From: Magallana gigas
Taxonomy: Eukaryota
Direction of reading: 5' to 3'
Assembly: GCF_963853765.1 (NCBI RefSeq)
Contig: NC_088860.1
Coordinates: forward strand, 9,672,001-9,736,000
Length of the DNA stretch: 64,000 nt
A program made the position numbers and the translations under genes. Every line of letters starts with the position of its first letter. The first letter of the stretch is position 1. The notes under the pieces are model-generated. The model was not told where the DNA came from and did no database searches. It saw nothing but the letters and a program-made list of their open reading frames with translations. This document shows positions 296 to 9,780 of this stretch, piece by piece.

Positions 296-1655
296 GATAT
301 ATACCCTTATCATTTAATATTTATTCATTTGATGAGATATTGGCGCTTCTGATTGGTCAAAAAATTTCTTTGATACCTGCATCAATAAAATTTTTGCCGG
401 ATCTACTTTTCTCAACTGTTCTGATCTAACCCTATTTATAGAACGTGAATTTCCAAAATAAACACTGTCAACAAAATGTAAAGTTGTGTTTTATTGTCAT
501 CAAACAAAATACAACTTTATAAACATAAAAACTTGAAAGTTTAACCTTCAAAAATAAACAAAACACATTTTTTGATTTACAAAATAGAAAATTAAGAGTC
601 ATCTCATGGTTTCGTCTGCTTGAGATCAATCAACATTACCGCGAGGCACGCTGTTCCTTTTCCAGAATAATTATAACGAACATATAGGCCTCTACACTTT
701 CACGGTAACACTGTTGTTCAAATTTGGTAACGATGATTTTTAAATTTACACACTTACATGATCGGTCATCAGAATAAGCATCGTTAAGCAAAGCTATGAG
801 TAATGCATCAACTCCTTTGGCGCATTCCAAGTGGCAGATATACCATTTAAGTACATCACTGGCTATCTAATTACCACAACATTTACAAAAGTCGCTTATA
901 CATACTATTCTTTGTCGACATATCAACTATTTTCGTCCACGTTCGCCTCTCCTTAGATGGTTATGTCCAGTTGCATATTCCAGCGATCTCACATGAAAAC
1001 CAGTTTTATAACGAATCTTTCTGCACAGTGAATAATATATCACAAGCTATTGCATGTATTTTCCTTTTGTTTTCCATTTAGCCAGTTCAGATTTTAACTC
1101 ACTATTTGTGTTTAATCCATTAAATTCAGCTCAATAGCTCTGCATCAGCTGAAGGCACATCCATCTTGAATATTGCTGCTGTTGTTGTTGTTTTGTATTC
1201 ATATGCGCCGCTTCATTTACAGTATTTACCGGTACATTTTTTATCAATGACACTTCACATTTTTTTATTTGAAAAACTAGCTGTTATTAAATGATAAGAA
1301 ATGAAGATAATAATTTTTCTATTGATGTGCTACGCGCATTAATGAAGTTTTCCGGTCAATTTTTTCTTTGATACTTAGATCAATAGAAAAATTATCTTTA
1401 TTTCTTAAATCAGAACTATACTAAATTGTAATTTATCAGTTTTGTTAAATTGTGTCTTGATCTTAAACTTACATGCAGGGTTTGTATTTATTATTTTTTG
1501 CAAGGTTGCATTACATAGATTAATATTACACAGTTACTGTTAATACAGGTAGATATTTAGATCTTATTATACACTAATTTCATGTTTTGCTTACAATCAT
1601 GAATTATTACTATTTGGCTTGATAACAAGGATTTGAGAGAAATCTTTTATTACAG

Positions 1656-4600
1656 TAACTACAGATTGAAACAAACATGCGAACTGTGGATTTCAAACTT
1701 GATTGAAGAAGATTTTGGGAGAGCTGTTAAATGTGTTGTAAATGACAGTGGGCGAGTTTCCATTCTTCAGGCATTTCCTTTTAAGAAAGGTTAGTTACTG
1801 TATTTAACTGAACAGACACCAGTTAGCAAATGTGTTATTGGGACATGACACATCAACACACAACAGTGCTTTTAATAAAAACCAGCTTTGAAGGGAAAAC
1901 TTGTTTTTTTTTACAGTACAAAAAACAAAACCCACTAGTTATTTGTTATACTTAATAGGCAAATAGCATCATTTTTGAAAGGGGGGCAAAAAATCTTGAC
2001 AGGGAAAAAAATGGAAAACCTCTCAAAATCATTAAAATTCCTAATCCGTCGATTGGAGGGAGGGGGGAGGCGAGAACAAAACTTCATAAAGCATTACTTT
2101 CACTGTTAATTTCCTCCTTTTCAATTCAAATTTCAAATTTTACATGCTCCCCCTTAAAAACATAAGGGGGCCAACTCCATGTTAATTTACTTTTTCATAT
2201 GTAAATTTTTTAAAAATTATTGCTGTGAGAGTCCCCCCTTATTCTACATGCCTGTTTAATGCGTACATGGCCAATTATTCTGTGTAGTCTTGGTAAGCAA
2301 TGTTTGAGCATGGTGTAATAAGCTTGCTCACTGTTTTTTCTTCTTTTTTTCAGAGATCAATACTCTAACAGAATCTGGTTCCAGTTTAATCATGCCCATC
2401 GTATTAGCTGTTCCATTGATTCTACTAGTTATTGTACTTTGTGTGGTATTTCACAAAAGGTGCAATTACACACTGCAGAGTAAATACCCCATCTTTAATT
2501 CACACAAAGGTAATGCATTAAGTTATAACCTAATCTTAATTACACACTGATATCAATGTAAACAAAAAATTACTCTCATATAATAAATTATAGATAAATA
2601 TTTGTACAAATTCTTTGTAAATTAAATTCAAGCATTGTACATGTACTAAAAATATATCCGCATATAATAAAATAACTTTCAACTTTATTTCACGTATACA
2701 GTAACACAGTTATAGCGAACACGCTTATAATGAATCGACGCTACCAGCGAAATGATTTTCATTCCTATGACTATATCATATACTTTAAATTTGACGGATT
2801 TATCAAATTTTTGCTTATAATGAAGTAGAATTACCTGTCCCTTGCACTAAGTTATAAGCGTGTTTTACTGTAGCTGGTAATGGCGTCGTGATTAAACATG
2901 AATGAAATATCACTCGTGCGATACACATGTACTGATGCTGACCAGATACTCAGCATTGTCTTTCAATATGTACAGGGTTTGACATTAAGTTTTTGAATTA
3001 CTAGACCAGTCGGGCTACCTCAGAAGTTTTTCACTAGCCCTGACTAACTACTAGCCCTGACCAATTTTTTCAAAAAAATAAACTAAACGTAATAAAAAAC
3101 ATAAAATATTAAATACCTGTTTCTGTTTAATTGTATTGGTTTATCTTTACCAATAATGAATCATTCAAATACTATTTAAGATTTAATTTTATTCAAACTG
3201 TACTAATAATGATACAAGTAATGGTTGACCAGGGACCAACAAAACTTTTGGGATACTTCCCTTACTTCTCCTTAACAGAGAAACATGAAGAAGTTTGAGA
3301 AATCGGGGAGACTTTCATTACTTGACAATAAATTAGACACAAGTCATTATGATTAGAAAATAAAACAAATTCTAAAAATTGAAAAAAAATTATCAGTTTA
3401 TTTAATTTAAATTATTTGATGTATTCATACATTTTATAGATCAAATGTTTTGTAATTGTGTTAACTAAAATGACAAATAAAATCAGTCTCTGTTTTTAGT
3501 GTATTTTGGTGGCATTAGTCCAACCCAACCATTTTGTTGAGGATTAGATTTTTTTAAAAAGATATTATAACTGTAAACAAAGGGTTTATGATTATTTCAG
3601 CATAAATTTGGCAGTGTTGTTAGCTAATTACAAGTTACATACAAATTCAGTGTTATATATCAACACTAGCCTTAAAGTAATAAACATCGTTTTGTACGTA
3701 CAGCATGTGGTTGCATCACCCATATTTATAACCCTTAAAGATAAGACAGACTACAAGAGGCATAAACTGAGTTTGTGAAGACGTCTTTAGAATTAAATAA
3801 TTATCATTTTATTGCCCTTGGTGTTAATTTGCACGATTACATGAACTCCGTGTACAATGTGACTTGGACTTTTTGTCCGGAGGAAATTCCGGCGAAGTTA
3901 CTGATCAAAAAGTGAGTATTTCCCCCACTTCATCCTCTAGGTTAATCCTTGGGTTGTACTTAAATTACGGTTTGAAGAATTTAAGCCTGTTAGGAAAAAG
4001 TGCTTTTACTTCTTTTGATATTAATATTACAGAAAAAGTACCGTAATGTCTCGTGTATAATACGCACTCGTGTATAATACGCACCCCCAAAGTTGACCAA
4101 AAAATGGCGAAAAAACAGCAGGTCCTATGTATAACACGCACCCAAAAAAATGGCGAAATCAACGGCCGCCATTTCCCCCCAAACTATCGATGTTTCATAG
4201 TAATTTTATAATCCATGCGCAATTTCTTTAATTTTGAGATCGGAACATAGCACAGACGATGAAAATCGACGGCCGCCATTTTCCCAAATAACTATCGATG
4301 TTTAATGATGATTTTTTAACCCAAGCGTAATTACTGTAATTTCGTGATCGGAACATGGCCTAAGCGATATTAGAGTCAAAGTTCTTATACTTTTAATTAA
4401 AAAGGACGGCACGATTTACATGGACGGTATCAAATATCATTTGACACTTCGTAAAGAGTTTCTTACAACATCGGAGAAGTAGAAGATCATCATACGTAGA
4501 GAAGAACGGCAACCGAGCTTAGTGCTTAAAAGTAATAATGTTTGCAGACATAAACCAGAAATGATTTAATTGATTAATTATAGTCAAACCCTATGATTGT

Positions 4601-7200
4601 TGTTTAAATAAACATTGTGAAGAAACGTACGTATGTCGTATATCGTCATTATCAAGTCGTACAAATGATCGATGTAATTTTAGCAGTGTCTATGTAATTT
4701 AAAGCAATAACGTTTAACTGCATAACGGGACACAAAGTAATTAAGTTTAATAAAATCAGAATAATTGCTTATCTACGTGCACTTGAAAACACCCTGTGAA
4801 GTCCGACACGAGAGAGGTGCATGCTTCTGACACCGGAAATTGTTAAACAAACATTGACCACGCGCCAAGTCAACAGGTGGCTGCTTACGTAATGGCGAAT
4901 ACACTGGCGATATTTAAACTTGTTTGATGCAAGAAATAGTGTTAAAAGAGGATAAATATTTCAATATATTGGGGGGGGGGGGGGGGAATTAAGAATAAGG
5001 TATTTCTGATGCAGTAAATTTAGTATACACTCATTCAATTTGCATAATACGCTAAATCGGCAGTCACTACTCCCGTGGTATCAAGAATCACGGTTTGAAA
5101 AAATGGGGTACAATTTTGGTCCTATGTATAACACGCACCCCCCACTTTTGATCAAATTTTGGCTGAAAAAAAGTGCGTGTTATACACGCGACATTACGGT
5201 ATGTTCACTTTTTTTTTTCCACACGACCAGTCGGGCTAGTACACAGACATTTAACCCGACCGGACCCATCGTTGACTAGACAATGTCCGTCGGACGTGCC
5301 TTAGTGTCGAACCCTGAATGTACACAAACAATTACACTTAAGACTATCGGCGTGTAGATCTGTAGAACCATGGTTGCATGATTATGATGTCCATGAAGCC
5401 CTCTACCAAAATAGTGAAATTCATGACCCCTGGGTCAGGGGTTCAGGCTCTAGGGTGGGGCCAATATGGCCATATAGTAAATATCTATTAAATCTTAGAA
5501 AATTTTCTTCTCTACATCTAAATATATTTGTTTAAAAACTTATTAAATGGTTATGATGTCCATGAAGCCCTCTACCAAAATTGTGAAATTCATGGCCCCT
5601 TGGTCAGGGGTTCTGGCTCTAGGTAGGGGCCAATATGGCCCTATAGTAAAAATCTATTAAATCTTCAAAAATATTCTTCTCTCCTCGCATATATATTTGT
5701 TAAAAACTGATTGCATGGTTATGATGCAATGGCCCCTGGGTCAGGGGTTCAGGCTCTAGGGTGGGGCCAATATGGCCATAAAGTAAAAATCTATTAAATC
5801 TTAGAAAATCTTCTTCTCTACTTCTAAATATATTTGATAAAAACCGATTGCATGGTTATGATGTCCATGAAGCCCTCTACCAAAATTGTGAAATTCATGG
5901 CCCCTGGGTCAGGGGTTCTGGCTCTAGGTAGGGGCCAATATGGATATATAGTAAAAATGTATTAAATCTATAAAAATCTTCTTCTCTACTCGCATATAAT
6001 ATTTGTTAAAAACTGATTCAGGGTTATGATGCAATGGCCCCTGGGTCAGGGGTTCAGGCTCTAGGGTGGGGCCAATATGGTCATATAGTAAAAATTTATT
6101 AATTCTCAGAAAAACTTCCTCTCAACTCCCATATATATTTGTTAAAAACTAAATGCATGATAATGATGTCCATGAAGCCCTCTTTCAGAATTGTGAAATT
6201 CATGGCCCCTGGGTCAGGGGTTCTGGCTCTAGGGTGGGGCCAATATGGCCATATAGTAAAAATATATTAAATCTTCAAAAATCTTCTTCTCTACTCCCAT
6301 ATATATTTGTTAAAAACTTATTGCATGGTAATGATGTCCATGACGCCCTCTACCAAAATTGTGAAATTCATGTCCCCTTGGTCAGGGGTTCAGGCTCTAG
6401 GGTGAGGCCAATATGGCCATGTAGTTAAAATGTATTAATTCTTAGAAAATCTTCCTCTCTACTCCCATATATATTTGTTAAAAACTTATTGCATGGTTAT
6501 GATGTCCATGAAGCCCTCTTTCAAAATTTTGAAATTCATGGCCCCTGGGTCAGGCTCTAGGGTGGGGCCAATATAACCATATAGTAAAAATCTATGAAAT
6601 CTTAGAAATTCATCTTCTCGACTACCATATATATTTGTAAACAAGAGGCCAATTGGCCTTAACGGTTACCTGAGTAGCATATAACCCATACGCAAACTTG
6701 TCGAGGAGTCTCATATATGCATTTAATTAATTAGGTTTCATTCTGGAGTAGAAAAATTATAAATTTGTAATGACGACCACCTCCCTGCCTGAAATCTTTC
6801 AAAAAGAACTATGAAGCCTATAATTTTGGCGGAAAACTAAAAAATCTGTCAGGAAACTTTCCTAAGATATGACCTAAGTGTGTTCCTAAGATATGACTTA
6901 GAAAAAAAGTTAGGAACTTCCTAAGATCAACTTAAAACACGTCTTAAGATGTAGCTCGACGGTAACTTAGGAACATCTTAAGTTAGGATATCCTTACCTT
7001 CTATAACCATTCTTATTTTTCATATCTATTCATACAGATCGATTTTTGTGGTGATAAATCATTAAACAGTGTGCCAGAGAAAAGTGTATGTGTCGGTAGT
7101 TTAAACAATATGCCTAAAAAAACCAGTAATTTGATTGTATAAATTTTTAAAAATTTATAAATACTTAAATATATATCAGTGTTCAATAATAATTTAGTTA

Positions 7201-7234
<34 letters not shown>

Positions 7235-9075
7235 AAGAAAAAAGCACTCGAGTGACCGTTTGGGCATATTGGCCTCTTATTTTCTTTCCTCTCCATGCAA
7301 ACACATTATTCCACTTCTATCGGACCAACTACATTATCGCGTTGACATCTTGTGTACATTCTAAAATTAGCTTGTCGCATCACGTGTTTATGAATACTTC
7401 AAAGTTAGGCGTTTACTGACCGACCTGGTCAGTAAATAAATTATTTAGAATTTATATTTAATACTTTTAAATGCGTTTGATTTAAACTGTATAATTTTCA
7501 GAAAGTTTATAACTTTTGTAGCTGAATTGAAAAATGCAAACATTTCTTTCTATTAAAATTTTCATTTCAAACTGCATATATAATATATATACCTTTAACA
7601 ATTGAATTCCTGCAGAGAAGAACAGAAAAGTGATGGTCTATACTTTTAATGATGAAGATTGGAAGGAAGAGTTACCTCTCTTGGAAAAACTGCTAGAAGA
7701 TTATGTTACTGCCACCATACATGATGTTAAACCTGGACAGAGTAAGTTTTATTAAGCTTATCTGAGCTTTTAACTCTTGTAGCTTTTATACTGATCATCA
7801 TTTGTCTTACACATTTTTGTTTATTTGTCTGTAAACTTTCTAGATTTTCTTTCAGTCTTCCCAATTTTAGAGCCAGATCGAGGACCAATTTAATTCAATC
7901 AATTTTGACAAAAAATAACATCCATAGGTGTATGTGAATCAGAATTGCTTAAATATAGGGCTGCAACTTTTTAAAAGGGAAAGATTTCTTAAAAAATAAA
8001 ACAAAACAAAAAAACCGAAAGTAGAATTGGAGTCATAAATTCCTCTCAAGATCAACCAAAAAAAGTCTAGAAAAGGAGAAGAAAATTAAGCTATTTCATA
8101 TTCTGTTCACTTTAATGTGTTAAAATCTTAAATTGACCTCCAGACCAAAATTAGGGCTATATGAAGGATGTAAAACTATTCATAGAATAATGTATGCATT
8201 TTGACATTAGTAACAAAAATTTTTAACAAGTTATCTTTTATGTTTATACTTCAGGCAAGCAAGTAGCATTGGTGTGTGTGTGTGTTTGGGGGGGGGGGGT
8301 CCCCCCTTTACTTAATTATAACACGACATACTCTACCTCAAAAGGAACTAATAAAATGGCTGGTGTATGTGGGGGAGGGGGACCCCTTTTTTCCCAACAG
8401 CAAACATTTTCCTTAAATGCACATGTAGAGAACTGAATTCAGATGGAATGCCCCGACCGGCCCCCTTTACTTAATTATAATATGACAAACTCTACCTCAG
8501 AAGTAACTAATATAATCTTCTAAGATTCATAACAGTGCCCTTTACTCCTATTTAGTTTCACATGTGAAGTCAGATTATTCTTCCTTTTTGTAAAATCATG
8601 GTTTTTTATTTTGTTTTTTTCCTCTCTTTTTTTCACTTTAGACATATTAGAAGGATTCAGTGAAGAAGCAAAAACATGTGTTGCTATATTAATTGTGGTA
8701 GATGTGAGGTCCCTTGCACAGGATGAATCATACAAGAACAGATTCCACAATCTGCTAAAATGTGATGCTGTGAAGGGGAAATCTGGAATCCTGCCATGTT
8801 ATACAACAATTTTGTATGTTCATCAAAGCTGTCATGAATACACTTATGCCAAAGATAAGCAGGAGAAAAAGTTCTACTCCATTGATATTAAACACAAAGA
8901 GGATGCCAAAATCAAAAGAAAACTTTTGAAAAGGTTACCCAAAAAAAGTTCTGCCAGTGAAGTACAAAGCAAAAACAGTTATAGTACATTTGTTGTTGAA
9001 AATCCTGGGGCACAGGCACCACAAAGTTATTCTAGAATGGAAAGTAATAATAGCACCTCCCCTCTTGTCCCCTAA
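1656..9075 (+). CDS. Ig-like ectodomain + transmembrane helix + TIR-like domain receptor (IL-1R-like architecture), 5'-incomplete
   Basis: Exons 1656-1789, 2354-2509, 7616-7741, 8642-9075; the three introns between them are GT-AG and phase 1, and the join is in frame. The Ig E/F-strand pattern is ELWISNLIEEDFGRAVKC. The TM is IMPIVLAVPLILLVIVLCVVF followed by HKR. The TIR-like region has KVMVYTFNDEDW, BB-loop HDVKPGQNI, TCVAILIVV and terminal helix KRKLLKRLP. The first acceptor (1655 vs 1664) and the upstream exons are unresolved. Confidence 0.75.
2699..2870. mobile_element. Tc1/mariner-type MITE
   Basis: TA|CAGTAACAC...ACACGCTTATAA at left and TTATAAGCGTGTTTTACTG|TA at right; TA target duplication; lies in intron 2 of the TIR gene. 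Confidence 0.75.
2973..5316. mobile_element. Non-autonomous DNA transposon with CAGGGTT termini
   Basis: TIR CAGGGTTTGACATTAAG (2973) vs CTTAGTGTCGAACCCTG (ending 5316), 15/17 match; subterminal CTAGCCC/GGGCTAG motifs; flanks TATGTA/AATGTA (5/6 direct repeat). Confidence 0.7.
4041..5199. mobile_element. pogo/Tigger-type non-autonomous element nested in the CAGGGTT element
   Basis: TA|CCGTAATGTCTCGTGTATAATACGCAC ... GTGCGTGTTATACACGCGACATTACGG|TA; 27-bp TIR with 2 mismatches; TA duplication; repeated GTATAAYACGCAC motifs. Confidence 0.85.
5374..6640 (+). repeat. Cg170-type satellite array (~8 monomers of ~166 bp, two shortened)
   Basis: Recurring GATGTCCATGAAGCCCTCTACCAAAATTGTGAAATTCATGGCCCCTGGGTCAGGGGTTCAGGCTCTAGGGTGGGGCCAATATGG at ~166-bp period. 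This matches my recollection of the oyster Cg170 satellite, which is carried inside Helitron/Helentron (HINE) elements. Confidence 0.85.
6640..7280. mobile_element. HINE (non-autonomous Helentron) ends flanking the satellite array
   Basis: AACAAGAGGCCAATTGGCCTTAACGGTTACCTGAGT at 6640 (reverse-oriented end) and a degenerate forward end ACTCGAGTGACCGTTTGGGCATATTGGCCTCTTATT at ~7246-7281; a CTAAG-rich insert lies at ~6853-7010. Confidence 0.6.
7203..7232. repeat. Poly-C tract (30 nt)
   Basis: Directly visible homopolymer. Confidence 0.95.
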
Positions 9076-9540
9076 AAAAGGTTTGGATTCCACTCCAATC
9101 ACTCCAATAGAAATTGATGAAACTGAAATATATACTATCCAGTTCTAACCAGTTTAAGAATTATCTACCCATGCATTTATATCCACATCACTAATGTATT
9201 TTAAAAGCATTGATTAACTTATTGAATATCAATTTTATTTCTAATACAATCCAAGATAAATAATGTAATTGAAATGTAAATGTGATTTATATATATATTA
9301 AATATATACATGTATATTACCTGGTTCATTTATATGATATCTTCATACCCACATGAAATTCCAGTAAAAGCATTTTATTGTTTATTTTAATGCAGTTGAT
9401 CCAGGTTTAATTTGCAGGGCATTGTAGTAGTTTTATTTACATATGTACTAGCTATCTGCATGTTTTAATTGGCAACCAAAATTTGAGTGTCATTCTTTGA
9501 GTTATCAGTGAGTTACCTAGCTTATAGTTCCTTGCAGTGT

Positions 9541-9780
9541 TAACAAAGCTTTTGTTTACATTTGAATGTTGAAGTGAAAATTCCAGTTTTAGACCTAAAA
9601 TGAATGTGTTAAACGTTGGGAACTGTTTATTTATGCTTAAAATGAATTAAAAGATAGAAAAACAGCTTGAAAAAGTTTTTTACTGGTATATAGAACCCAT
9701 GTAAACAAAAAAAGGGCACAAGCCTTGTTTACATGACAAAGAATTGTGAGCCCTGTATCTTGCTTATAACTTATTGTAAT
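9541..9780 (+). mobile_element. Internal fragment of the TTAA element found complete at 44371-44862
   Basis: Near-identical to ~44520-44760 (TTGAATGTTGAAGTGAAAATTCCAGTTTTAGACCTAAAATGA...CCTTGTTTACATGAC); termini absent. Confidence 0.8.

What the first reader, a model, noticed from the sequence alone, without database searches (positions are those of the whole stretch)
1656..9075. Ig-TM-TIR (IL-1 receptor-like) receptor hidden in short exons
Seen: four exons, three of them missed by the ORF track, splice in phase 1 into an Ig-like segment, one hydrophobic TM with a basic stop-transfer motif, and a cytoplasmic domain with TIR-like order: hydrophobic strand + D..W, HDVKPGQNI BB-loop with the conserved Pro, hydrophobic strand, and terminal KLLKRLP helix. 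Established: Ig+TIR is the vertebrate IL-1R family layout, whereas most known mollusc TIR receptors are LRR-type Tolls. Inference: this is a divergent, possibly independently assembled Ig-TIR immune receptor. It lacks box-3 FW and an obvious WCxxE catalytic Glu, so a scaffold role is more likely than NADase activity.
Basis: partly seen in the sequence, partly recalled or inferred. Interest (0 to 1): 0.75.

Follow-up and report, generated by a model that had tools for sequence, protein, structure and literature searches.

The report
Oyster Ig receptor, cryptic TIR-like domain
The four exons are the real, transcribed 3' half of a seven-exon oyster gene for a membrane receptor with two Ig-like domains outside the cell and, inside, a domain that folds like the TIR signalling module of Toll/IL-1 receptors but is too diverged for standard domain models to recognise.

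Summary
Observation confirmed. All four exons have AG/GT borders and one open frame. RNA-derived contigs from four studies carry junctions 1789/2354 and 2509/7616. Contigs from two of those runs continue from 7741 into the first bases of 8642.

The gene is longer than reported. Three more coding exons lie upstream of the window: a signal peptide, Ig1, and the first half of Ig2. Together they give a 451-aa protein. It clusters at 90% identity or more with RefSeq "uncharacterized protein LOC128179590" (Crassostrea angulata). Relatives were found only in oysters (Crassostrea, Saccostrea, Ostrea).

Ig1 passes Pfam's threshold, and the TM helix is plain. The cytoplasmic domain gets no Pfam TIR/SEFIR hit, no PADLOC TIR-model hit and no PDB sequence hit.

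Four weaker lines nevertheless point to TIR:
- An AlphaFold model (pLDDT 71) has the TIR strand-helix order.
- Its best structural matches are TIR domains (IL-1RAcPb, SIGIRR), though small GTPases tie on Z.
- Protein-language-model neighbours are all TIR.
- A profile comparison with 26 TIRs from the same genome aligns box 2-αB-βC in register (P = 9e-4).

Verdict: a lineage-restricted, highly diverged Ig-TIR-type receptor. It resembles IL-1R in architecture only. IG-TIR proteins were already catalogued in oysters, so novelty is moderate.

The parts
1656..1789 (+). Coding exon 4 of 7: C-terminal half of Ig-like domain 2, including the second Ig cysteine in ...EDFGRAVKC... (protein residues 169-214).
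   Evidence: AG/GT borders and open frame. Joint 1789/2354 in 4 runs. Matches P0012 170-213 at 42/44. Ig2 as a whole: Pfam ig E=0.015, below cut-off; language-model neighbours 0.91, 9 of 10 in the Ig clan.
2354..2509 (+). Coding exon 5: extracellular stalk, TM helix, basic stop-transfer HKR and juxtamembrane linker.
   Evidence: Joints on both sides in 4 runs. Matches P0012 215-265 at only 44/51, making it the most polymorphic exon.
2386..2451 (+). Transmembrane helix, 22 hydrophobic residues (protein 225-246), followed by H-K-R at 2452-2460.
   Evidence: Read directly from the translation. Only weak TM-type Pfam hits. Inference from hydrophobicity.
7616..7741 (+). Coding exon 6 (126 nt, so skipping it keeps the frame): strand A, helix A, strand B and the start of the BB-loop-like HDVKPGQ of the TIR-like domain.
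   Evidence: Joint 2509/7616 in 4 runs and loose end at 7741. 41/41 identical to P0012 267-307. Model secondary structure.
7720..7741 (+). Box-2/BB-loop-like motif H-D-V-K-P-G-Q-(N-I), with the same spacing as R-D-F-x-P-G-x-x-I of oyster TLR TIRs. The codon for N is split by the intron and completed at 8642-8643.
   Evidence: hhalign aligns this stretch in register with a 26-sequence TIR profile from the same genome, P=8.9e-4; 0 of 200 column shuffles reach that score.
8642..8949 (+). Coding exon 7, first part: helix B, strand C, helix C, strands D and E, and terminal helix (..KLLKRLP) of the TIR-like domain (protein 308-410).
   Evidence: 143/143 identical to P0012 309-451. AF2 model pLDDT 71, pTM 0.75. 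Fold matches.
8950..9072 (+). Low-complexity C-terminal tail of about 41 residues, predicted disordered.
   Evidence: pLDDT below 50 in the long model. The tail varies in length among family members.
9028..9045 (+). Family-wide conserved tail motif Y-S-R-M-E-S, followed by S/T-rich residues and P-L near the C-terminus.
   Evidence: R, two S and P are invariant across 8 sequences from Crassostrea, Saccostrea and Ostrea.
9073..9075 (+). Stop codon TAA. The 3' UTR runs on to about 9590.
   Evidence: Sequence. The UTR length is inferred from the 1616-nt contig of run X6, which has 949 nt after exon 6.

Best explanation
This is the 3' half of an expressed, single-copy oyster gene with 7 coding exons and a 451-aa product. 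It encodes a type-I membrane receptor built from a signal peptide, two Ig-like domains, a stalk, one TM helix, a roughly 145-residue cytoplasmic domain with a TIR-type fold, and a short tail carrying a conserved YSRMES motif. The cytoplasmic domain is most likely a very diverged member of the TIR (STIR) superfamily. It keeps the box-2/BB-loop-helix B-strand C core but has lost box 1 and box 3 (FW). Inferred mechanism, not shown: a ligand binds the polymorphic Ig ectodomain and clusters the receptor. The TIR-like domains then act as an assembly scaffold for TIR adaptors such as the oyster MyD88 paralogues, or act as a SIGIRR-like brake on them. NAD+ hydrolysis is the less likely role.
For: Gene and splicing. 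Upstream exons (signal peptide, Ig1, first half of Ig2); the assembled frame is 451 aa with one terminal stop. Single copy in the genome. Ig1 passes the Pfam ig cut-off, 24.0 against 21.8 bits. TIR-like fold: the AF2 model of P0012:264-410 (pLDDT 71, pTM 0.75) has the order bA-aA-bB-aB-bC-aC-bD-bE-aE. Foldseek's best PDB hit is the IL-1RAcPb TIR (E 4.2e-4, TM 0.54/0.55), followed by SARM1, TRAM, TLR10 and MAL TIRs. VIA-align's top hits are SIGIRR TIR (Z 10.8-11.0, rmsd 3.2, 131-133 of about 147 residues) and RRS1/RPS4 TIR (Z 10.5). In the ESM Atlas shape search the first row is the IL-1RAcP cluster (TM 0.65) and 7 of 10 rows are TIR families. The top three language-model neighbours are all TIR, at 0.85-0.88. 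hhalign against 26 TIRs of the same genome gives P=8.9e-4 in register at box 2, with 0 of 200 shuffles reaching it and a reversed control scoring 9.6 against 26.3. Selection pattern typical of a receptor: among allelic 451-aa forms there are 38 variable sites in residues 1-265 and 4 in 266-451, Fisher p=4e-6.
Against: No Pfam TIR, TIR_2 or SEFIR hit at E<=10 on any family member. No hit to any TIR-containing PADLOC model; only two chance-level hits to unrelated models. No PDB sequence hit with the family profile. The hhalign probability is only 23%, it covers 30 columns, and it was P=0.059 against a narrower TIR profile. The structural model rests on 9 sequences, and only 2 of its 5 models exceed pLDDT 60. 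VIA-align Z scores for Arf-like and G-alpha GTPases (9.5-10.5) tie with the TIRs, so geometry alone does not single out TIR. The BB-loop Pro varies within the family, and boxes 1 and 3 are absent. There are no functional data.
Confidence: 0.65

Rival explanations
1. The cytoplasmic module is a lineage-specific three-layer alpha/beta (flavodoxin-like) domain that is not homologous to TIR. On this reading the protein is an Ig-superfamily receptor or adhesion molecule that signals another way, for example through its conserved YSRMES tail.
For: No sequence-model hit to TIR. Unrelated alpha/beta folds score almost as well in VIA-align: GTPases Z 9-10.5, decarboxylase wing domains and receiver domains. 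The tail motif is the most conserved short element across genera.
Against: TIR ranks first in every structural and embedding search, on two separate models. The profile match falls exactly on the TIR box 2 in the right register. The position about 20 residues after a TM helix of an Ig receptor is the TIR position in the IL-1R family. There is no P-loop or other nucleotide-binding motif: the GKS after helix C is not conserved in the family and is in the wrong place.
Confidence: 0.25
2. The domain is a SEFIR-type STIR domain (IL-17 receptor/Act1-like) rather than a TIR proper.
For: The IL-17RB SEFIR domain (E 4.4e-3, TM 0.49/0.52) and a prokaryotic SEFIR appear among the Foldseek hits. Oysters are known to have an IL-17 system (PMC10816183).
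Against: No Pfam SEFIR hit. SEFIR ranks below many TIRs in Foldseek and is absent from the VIA-align top 50. The ectodomain is Ig, not the fibronectin-III type of IL-17 receptors (the FnIII point is from my own knowledge). A BB-loop-like D-x-x-P-G is present, which is a TIR feature.
Confidence: 0.05
3. The model is a chance open frame or a decaying pseudogene.
For: Short exons, and no domain-model hit for most of the protein.
Against: Spliced contigs from four studies. 199 database sequences in its 90% cluster. Full-length orthologues in at least three oyster genera. The cytoplasmic domain is nearly invariant among alleles.
Confidence: 0.02

Closest known systems
Vertebrate IL-1 receptor family, especially SIGIRR/IL-1R8 and IL-1RAcP
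   Same: Type-I membrane protein with Ig ectodomain, single TM helix and juxtamembrane TIR-fold domain. The best structural matches are SIGIRR and IL-1RAcPb TIRs. Like SIGIRR it has few Ig domains and a C-terminal tail after the TIR (the SIGIRR tail is from my own knowledge).
   Different: Two Ig domains rather than three (or one). 12-17% sequence identity in the structural alignments. No Pfam TIR hit. Box 1 and box 3 are missing. No evidence of orthology or of an IL-1-type ligand.
Invertebrate IG-TIR proteins (C. gigas catalogue PMC4346834; Aplysia PMC9334734; cnidarian and amphioxus IL-1R-like PMC2858798, PMC5094078; two-Ig candidates in bioRxiv 10.1101/2025.07.17.662885)
   Same: Same architecture, often with two Ig domains. 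The literature argues that this architecture arose repeatedly.
   Different: Those proteins were found because their TIR is detectable by domain models. This family is not detectable that way, so it was most likely missed (inference). It was found only in oysters and carries its own conserved tail motif.
TIR domains of oyster Toll-like receptors (144 Pfam TIR matches in this genome)
   Same: The box-2 core (D-x-x-P-G-x-x-I, helix B, hydrophobic strand C) aligns in register.
   Different: Ig rather than LRR ectodomain. The TIR is split by an intron inside the BB loop. No W-C-x-x-E and no F-W. Overall profile similarity is only marginal.
Small Arf-like and G-alpha GTPase fold
   Same: Similar three-layer alpha/beta geometry, Z 9.5-10.5.
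   Different: No Walker A/P-loop, DxxG or NKxD motif in any family member. This is a generic fold resemblance only.

Membership tests
TIR domain (Pfam PF01582 / PF13676) | Scores above the curated HMM cut-off | tested here: not met
   No TIR or TIR_2 hit at E<=10 for the exons, the full-length proteins or the isolated domain. The same PF01582 model finds 144 matches elsewhere in this genome.
TIR domain | Flavodoxin-like fold with five parallel strands alternating with helices (bA-aA-bB-aB-bC-aC-bD-aD-bE-aE) | tested here: met
   The AF2 model (pLDDT 71) has that order with a weak or absent aD. TIRs are the top hits in Foldseek, VIA-align and the Atlas search. Caveat: the model is of medium confidence and GTPases tie on Z.
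TIR domain | Box 2 / BB loop (R-D-x-x-P-G) | tested here: inconclusive
   The window has H-D-V-K-P-G with identical spacing, and hhalign aligns it in register at P=8.9e-4. Within the family the Pro is replaced by Ala (P0013) or Glu (P0008, P0014); D and G are kept.
TIR domain | Box 1 ((F/Y)-D-x-F-x-S-Y) and box 3 (F-W) | tested here: not met
   Strand A reads K-V-M-V-Y-T-F followed by an acidic run, with no Asp at the box-1 position. The terminal helix reads K-L-L-K-R-L-P, with no F-W.
TIR NADase subgroup (SARM1-like) | Catalytic Glu in the W-C-x-x-E context after strand C | tested here: inconclusive
   No W-C-x-x-E. A mostly conserved Glu (..D-E-S-Y..) lies in helix C but at a different spacing, and it was outside the hhalign-aligned block. 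Enzyme activity cannot be tested with these tools.
IL-1 receptor family | Extracellular Ig domains, single TM helix and cytoplasmic TIR in one polypeptide | tested here: inconclusive
   The Ig domains and TM helix are shown, and RNA contigs link them to the cytoplasmic domain. The TIR part is supported by fold only.
IL-1 receptor family | Common descent with vertebrate IL-1R TIRs, and an IL-1-type ligand | not tested
   No phylogeny is possible at this level of divergence with the sequences in hand. The Pfam IL1 model finds nothing in the genome, but that search also found nothing in its controls and is uninformative.
Immunoglobulin superfamily | Ig domain model above cut-off, with the paired cysteines and core Trp | tested here: met
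   Ig1: PF00047 at 24.0 bits against a 21.8 cut-off, residues 32-101 of P0012. Ig2: 16.1 bits, below cut-off, but the Cys pair is present and 9 of the 10 best named language-model neighbours are in the Ig clan, top score 0.91.
SEFIR domain (PF08357) | Scores above the HMM cut-off | tested here: not met
   No hit at E<=10. The structural match to IL-17RB SEFIR is weaker than to the TIRs.
P-loop GTPase | Walker A G-x4-G-K-[ST] between strand 1 and helix 1 | tested here: not met
   Absent from all family members. The loop after strand A is acidic (N-D/E-E-D).

The most novel reading that the evidence does not exclude
An oyster-specific receptor family assembled independently from Ig domains and a TIR module that has drifted below the detection limit of all standard models. 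Its highly polymorphic ectodomain and TM region act as a pathogen- or self/non-self-recognition surface, and signalling runs through the cryptic TIR plus a new conserved YSRMES docking tail. If so, domain-based censuses undercount TIR receptors in molluscs.
Probability: 0.3. Interest if true: 0.6.

Novelty: new variant of a known kind. Interest (0 to 1): 0.42.

Why it matters
Oysters have one of the largest innate-immune gene repertoires known, and those catalogues are built from domain-model hits. A conserved, expressed Ig receptor whose signalling domain is TIR-like only at the fold level would be invisible to such censuses. It adds a candidate to the sparse set of protostome IL-1R-type receptors just as IL-1-like cytokines are being reported in bivalves (bioRxiv 10.1101/2025.07.17.662885). 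The contrast between a highly variable ectodomain and TM region and a nearly invariant cytoplasmic domain makes it a reasonable candidate for recognition-driven diversification. It is not a new kind of system, though: Ig-TIR receptors are known in many invertebrates, and the gene is already annotated as uncharacterized.

Tried and rejected
- Exon-by-exon Pfam scans gave nothing useful.
- The word-index protein search with exon 7 found only unspliced ORF fragments from genomic contigs.
- The family profile against PDB sequences gave 0 hits at E<=10.
- PADLOC defence models gave only chance-level hits.
- The first AF2 model, which included the linker and tail, was too poor to use (pLDDT 48). TIRs already led its Foldseek list, but no hit reached E<=0.001.
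- hhalign against only 8 closely related TLR TIRs was not significant (P=0.059).
- The Pfam IL1 model found nothing in the whole genome, but its controls were silent too, so the result is uninformative.
- The profile word search for more family members added only two Saccostrea proteins.
- GTPase reading rejected: no P-loop.
- Pseudogene or chance-ORF reading rejected.
- No complex-prediction job was sent, because no specific binding claim is made.
- Searches used single exons by reference, and afterwards the database proteins P0012 and P0016, which have ids. Joining was done only inside local scripts, to check that the frame is open and to count differences.
- The 287 N in the window were left alone.
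- The search of earlier findings returned only this same finding and two unrelated notes on the window.
Full report
WHAT IS IN THE SEQUENCE

One frame stays open through all four and ends at TAA 9073-9075. The quoted peptide features are all present:
- an Ig-type ...L-x-I-x-N-L-x-x-E-D-F-G-x-A-V-K-C... segment;
- a 22-residue hydrophobic helix followed by H-K-R;
- a hydrophobic strand with an acidic run;
- H-D-V-K-P-G-Q-N-I, split by the intron at 7741/8642;
- K-L-L-K-R-L-P.

IS IT TRANSCRIBED AND SPLICED AS CLAIMED?

Yes. Contigs of four public runs from four studies were laid on window:1750-7749, within the 6000-letter limit. One run is recorded as RNA. The others are labelled RNA by a guess, but their contigs are spliced. 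All four carry a GT..AG joint skipping 564 bases (1789/2354) and a GT..AG joint skipping 5106 bases (2509/7616). In two runs the contig runs off the stretch at 7741 with letters that equal the start of exon 8642. Single contigs of 1.0-1.6 kb carry exons 5 and 6 contiguously. They extend 320-830 nt further 5' and about 950 nt further 3', so the Ig-TM part and the cytoplasmic part lie on one transcript.

THE GENE IS LARGER THAN THE FINDING

The window is G000:C8:9672001-9736000. Reading the 10 kb upstream (L006) shows three more coding exons:
- a signal-peptide exon, L006:5522-5582 (window -4478..-4418);
- an Ig1 exon, L006:8164-8439 (phase 1 on both sides);
- the first half of Ig2, L006:9392-9560 (ends in phase 2).

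The phase-2 end matches the single leading base of the exon at 1656. The seven exons give a 1356-nt frame of 451 codons plus stop.

HOW THE SPLICED PROTEIN WAS SEARCHED

The exhaustive HMMER search with exon 7 found only 8 representatives among 1.84 billion proteins. Follow-up word searches and a cluster look-up returned full-length database proteins that could then be used by id.

P0012 (451 aa, 199 sequences in its 90% cluster) is the same gene. It is 100% identical over exons 6 and 7 and contiguous across every junction. One cluster member, P0016, is RefSeq XP_052703008.1, "uncharacterized protein LOC128179590 [Crassostrea angulata]". Other members of the family:
- three further Crassostrea-type orthologues (P0005, P0011, P0013; 65-76% identical in the cytoplasmic part);
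- Saccostrea echinata LOC133181082 (P0014), and P0008, which is 73% identical to it;
- Saccostrea cucullata LOC134247401 isoform X2 (P0015);
- Ostrea edulis LOC125659417 (P0006, P0055).

All named members are annotated as uncharacterized. Nothing outside oysters was found. The gene is single-copy in this genome at the sensitivity.

ECTODOMAIN AND MEMBRANE ANCHOR

Ig1 passes the Pfam ig cut-off (24.0 against 21.8 bits). It does have the cysteine pair, and 9 of its 10 best named language-model neighbours are in the Ig clan, with a top score of 0.91. Several N-x-S/T sites lie in the ectodomain (direct reading). The TM helix and basic stop-transfer are plain.

IS THE CYTOPLASMIC DOMAIN A TIR?

By standard sequence models it is not. 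No Pfam TIR, TIR_2 or SEFIR hit appears at E<=10 on any exon, full-length protein or isolated domain. PADLOC gives no hit to a TIR model. The family profile finds nothing in PDB sequences. Four weaker and partly independent lines nevertheless point to TIR.

(i) Structure model. AlphaFold2 on the trimmed domain with a 9-sequence alignment gives pLDDT 71 and pTM 0.75. The element order is bA-aA-bB-[low-confidence loop]-aB-bC-aC-bD-bE-aE.

(ii) Structure searches with that model:
- Foldseek against PDB ranks the IL-1RAcPb TIR first (E 4.2e-4, TM 0.54/0.55). SARM1, TRAM, TLR10, MAL, SPARTA, SIGIRR, IL-1RAPL2 and IL-18Rβ TIRs follow.
- The exhaustive VIA-align search ranks SIGIRR TIR (Z 10.8, rmsd 3.2, 131 residues) and RRS1/RPS4 TIR (Z 10.5) first. 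The second-look search gives the same order, with SIGIRR at Z 11.0.
- The ESM Atlas shape search lists the IL-1RAcP cluster first (TM 0.65), and 7 of 10 rows are TIR families.
- Even the earlier poor model (pLDDT 48) had TIRs at the top.

(iii) Language-model features of residues 262-412. The three nearest clusters are all TIR (0.85-0.88). This is below the 0.9 level, so it is a lead only.

(iv) Profile-profile comparison. I built a TIR profile from 26 diverse TIR segments of this same genome. hhalign aligns H-D-V-K-P-G-Q-N-I plus helix B plus strand C with R-D-F-x-P-G-x-x-I plus helix B plus strand C in the expected register. The score is 26.3, P=8.9e-4, probability 23%. In controls, 200 column-shuffled versions average 11.5 ± 2.1 with a maximum of 19.8, and the reversed alignment scores 9.6.

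Against the TIR reading:
- The hhalign match covers only 30 columns, and it was P=0.059 against a narrower 8-sequence profile.
- Arf-like and G-alpha GTPases reach Z 9.5-10.5, which ties with the TIRs. Geometry alone therefore shows only a common three-layer alpha/beta sandwich.
- The GTPase reading itself fails on sequence, because there is no P-loop, DxxG or NKxD.
- Boxes 1 and 3 of TIR are absent.
- The BB-loop Pro is replaced by Ala (P0013) or Glu (the Saccostrea-type members) within the family.

My estimate is about 0.7 that this is a true, very diverged TIR-superfamily domain. Most of the remaining probability goes to an unrelated alpha/beta module.

OTHER FEATURES OF THE FAMILY

- A C-terminal motif, Y-S-R-M-E-S followed by S/T-rich residues and P-L, is conserved from Crassostrea to Ostrea. 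Its Y-x-x-M form resembles SH2-docking motifs, but one member has Phe there, so this remains speculation.
- Nine allelic 451-aa database forms were compared with the window's product. Variable sites number 38 in residues 1-265 (ectodomain, TM, juxtamembrane) and 4 in residues 266-451 (Fisher p=4e-6).
- RNA contigs show the same TM-exon variants at 2407-2452.
- Between species the stalk/TM segment is the least conserved (31-45%), while Ig2 and the TIR-like domain are the most conserved.
- The 126-nt exon 6 can be skipped without breaking the frame. The two Ostrea edulis products seen here (isoforms X3 and X4) lack that segment.
- A Saccostrea cucullata isoform has the ectodomain and TM helix with a short unrelated tail. 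Decoy-like isoforms are therefore plausible.

HOW IT PROBABLY WORKS

Shown: a secreted-pathway signal, two Ig-like domains, one TM helix, a folded alpha/beta cytoplasmic domain under strong constraint, and expression as one spliced mRNA.

Inferred: ligand-driven clustering through the variable ectodomain brings the TIR-like domains together, and they nucleate or block TIR adaptor assemblies. The absence of W-C-x-x-E and of any resemblance to the NADase active site beyond the fold makes a scaffold role more likely than catalysis. I cannot tell an activating role from a SIGIRR-like inhibitory one.

COMPARISON WITH WHAT IS KNOWN

The Ig-TM-TIR architecture is that of the IL-1R family. It is not restricted to vertebrates:
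- IG-TIR is a listed class in the C. gigas immune catalogue (PMC4346834, legend of Fig. 1) and in Aplysia (PMC9334734).
- Ig-TIR proteins of amphioxus and sea anemone were argued to have arisen independently (PMC2858798).
- Two-Ig candidate IL-1 receptors are described across invertebrates, together with IL-1-like cytokines in bivalves (bioRxiv 10.1101/2025.07.17.662885).

This family differs in four respects. Its TIR is undetectable by domain models, it was found only in oysters, it lacks boxes 1 and 3, and it has its own conserved tail. I therefore file it as a new variant of a known kind. It works like an Ig-TIR receptor, but TIR family membership by the curated sequence criterion was tested and not met.

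VERDICT

Interest is moderate: 0.42.

Noticed in passing
window 308-1412: An interspersed repeat of about 1.1 kb with short inverted-repeat matches at its ends. It lies in the intron before exon 1656 and gives 131 matches across all chromosomes, the full-length ones at 86-91% identity.
   Followed up: partly
window 15387-16199 (-) and 18601-18963 (-): Transposon-derived ORFs downstream of the gene: a Harbinger/PIF-type transposase (DDE_Tnp_4 E 4e-17 plus HTH_Tnp_4) and a THAP-domain ORF (E 2.5e-7). No host gene was seen between 9.6 kb and about 24 kb.
   Followed up: partly
window 2386-2460 (TM exon) and upstream Ig exons L006:8164-8439, 9392-9560: Strong allelic amino-acid polymorphism in the ectodomain and TM helix (38 variable sites in residues 1-265) next to a nearly invariant cytoplasmic domain (4 sites in residues 266-451). 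The TM-exon variants are also visible in RNA contigs at 2407, 2413, 2423, 2447 and 2452.
   Followed up: partly
P0015 (Saccostrea cucullata LOC134247401 isoform X2); P0006 and P0055 (Ostrea edulis LOC125659417): Relatives include an isoform with the ectodomain and TM helix but a short unrelated tail, and isoforms lacking the segment encoded by the frame-neutral 126-nt exon (window 7616-7741). These could be decoy or regulatory splice forms, or annotation artefacts.
   Followed up: no
window 2550-2749 and 5350-6349 (intron 5): Very high summed contig depth in all four runs at intronic repeats, with many loose ends. These are most likely transcribed copies of dispersed repeats elsewhere in the genome, not part of this gene.
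   Followed up: no
L005, L007 and L004 (window -40000 to -10000): The upstream 30 kb holds mainly tandem and dispersed repeat ORFs, for example repeated ...HDFHNLE.TLPEDAS.QVS... units near -32700 to -31300. No obvious neighbouring gene was seen and no IL-1-like gene was recognised.
   Followed up: no
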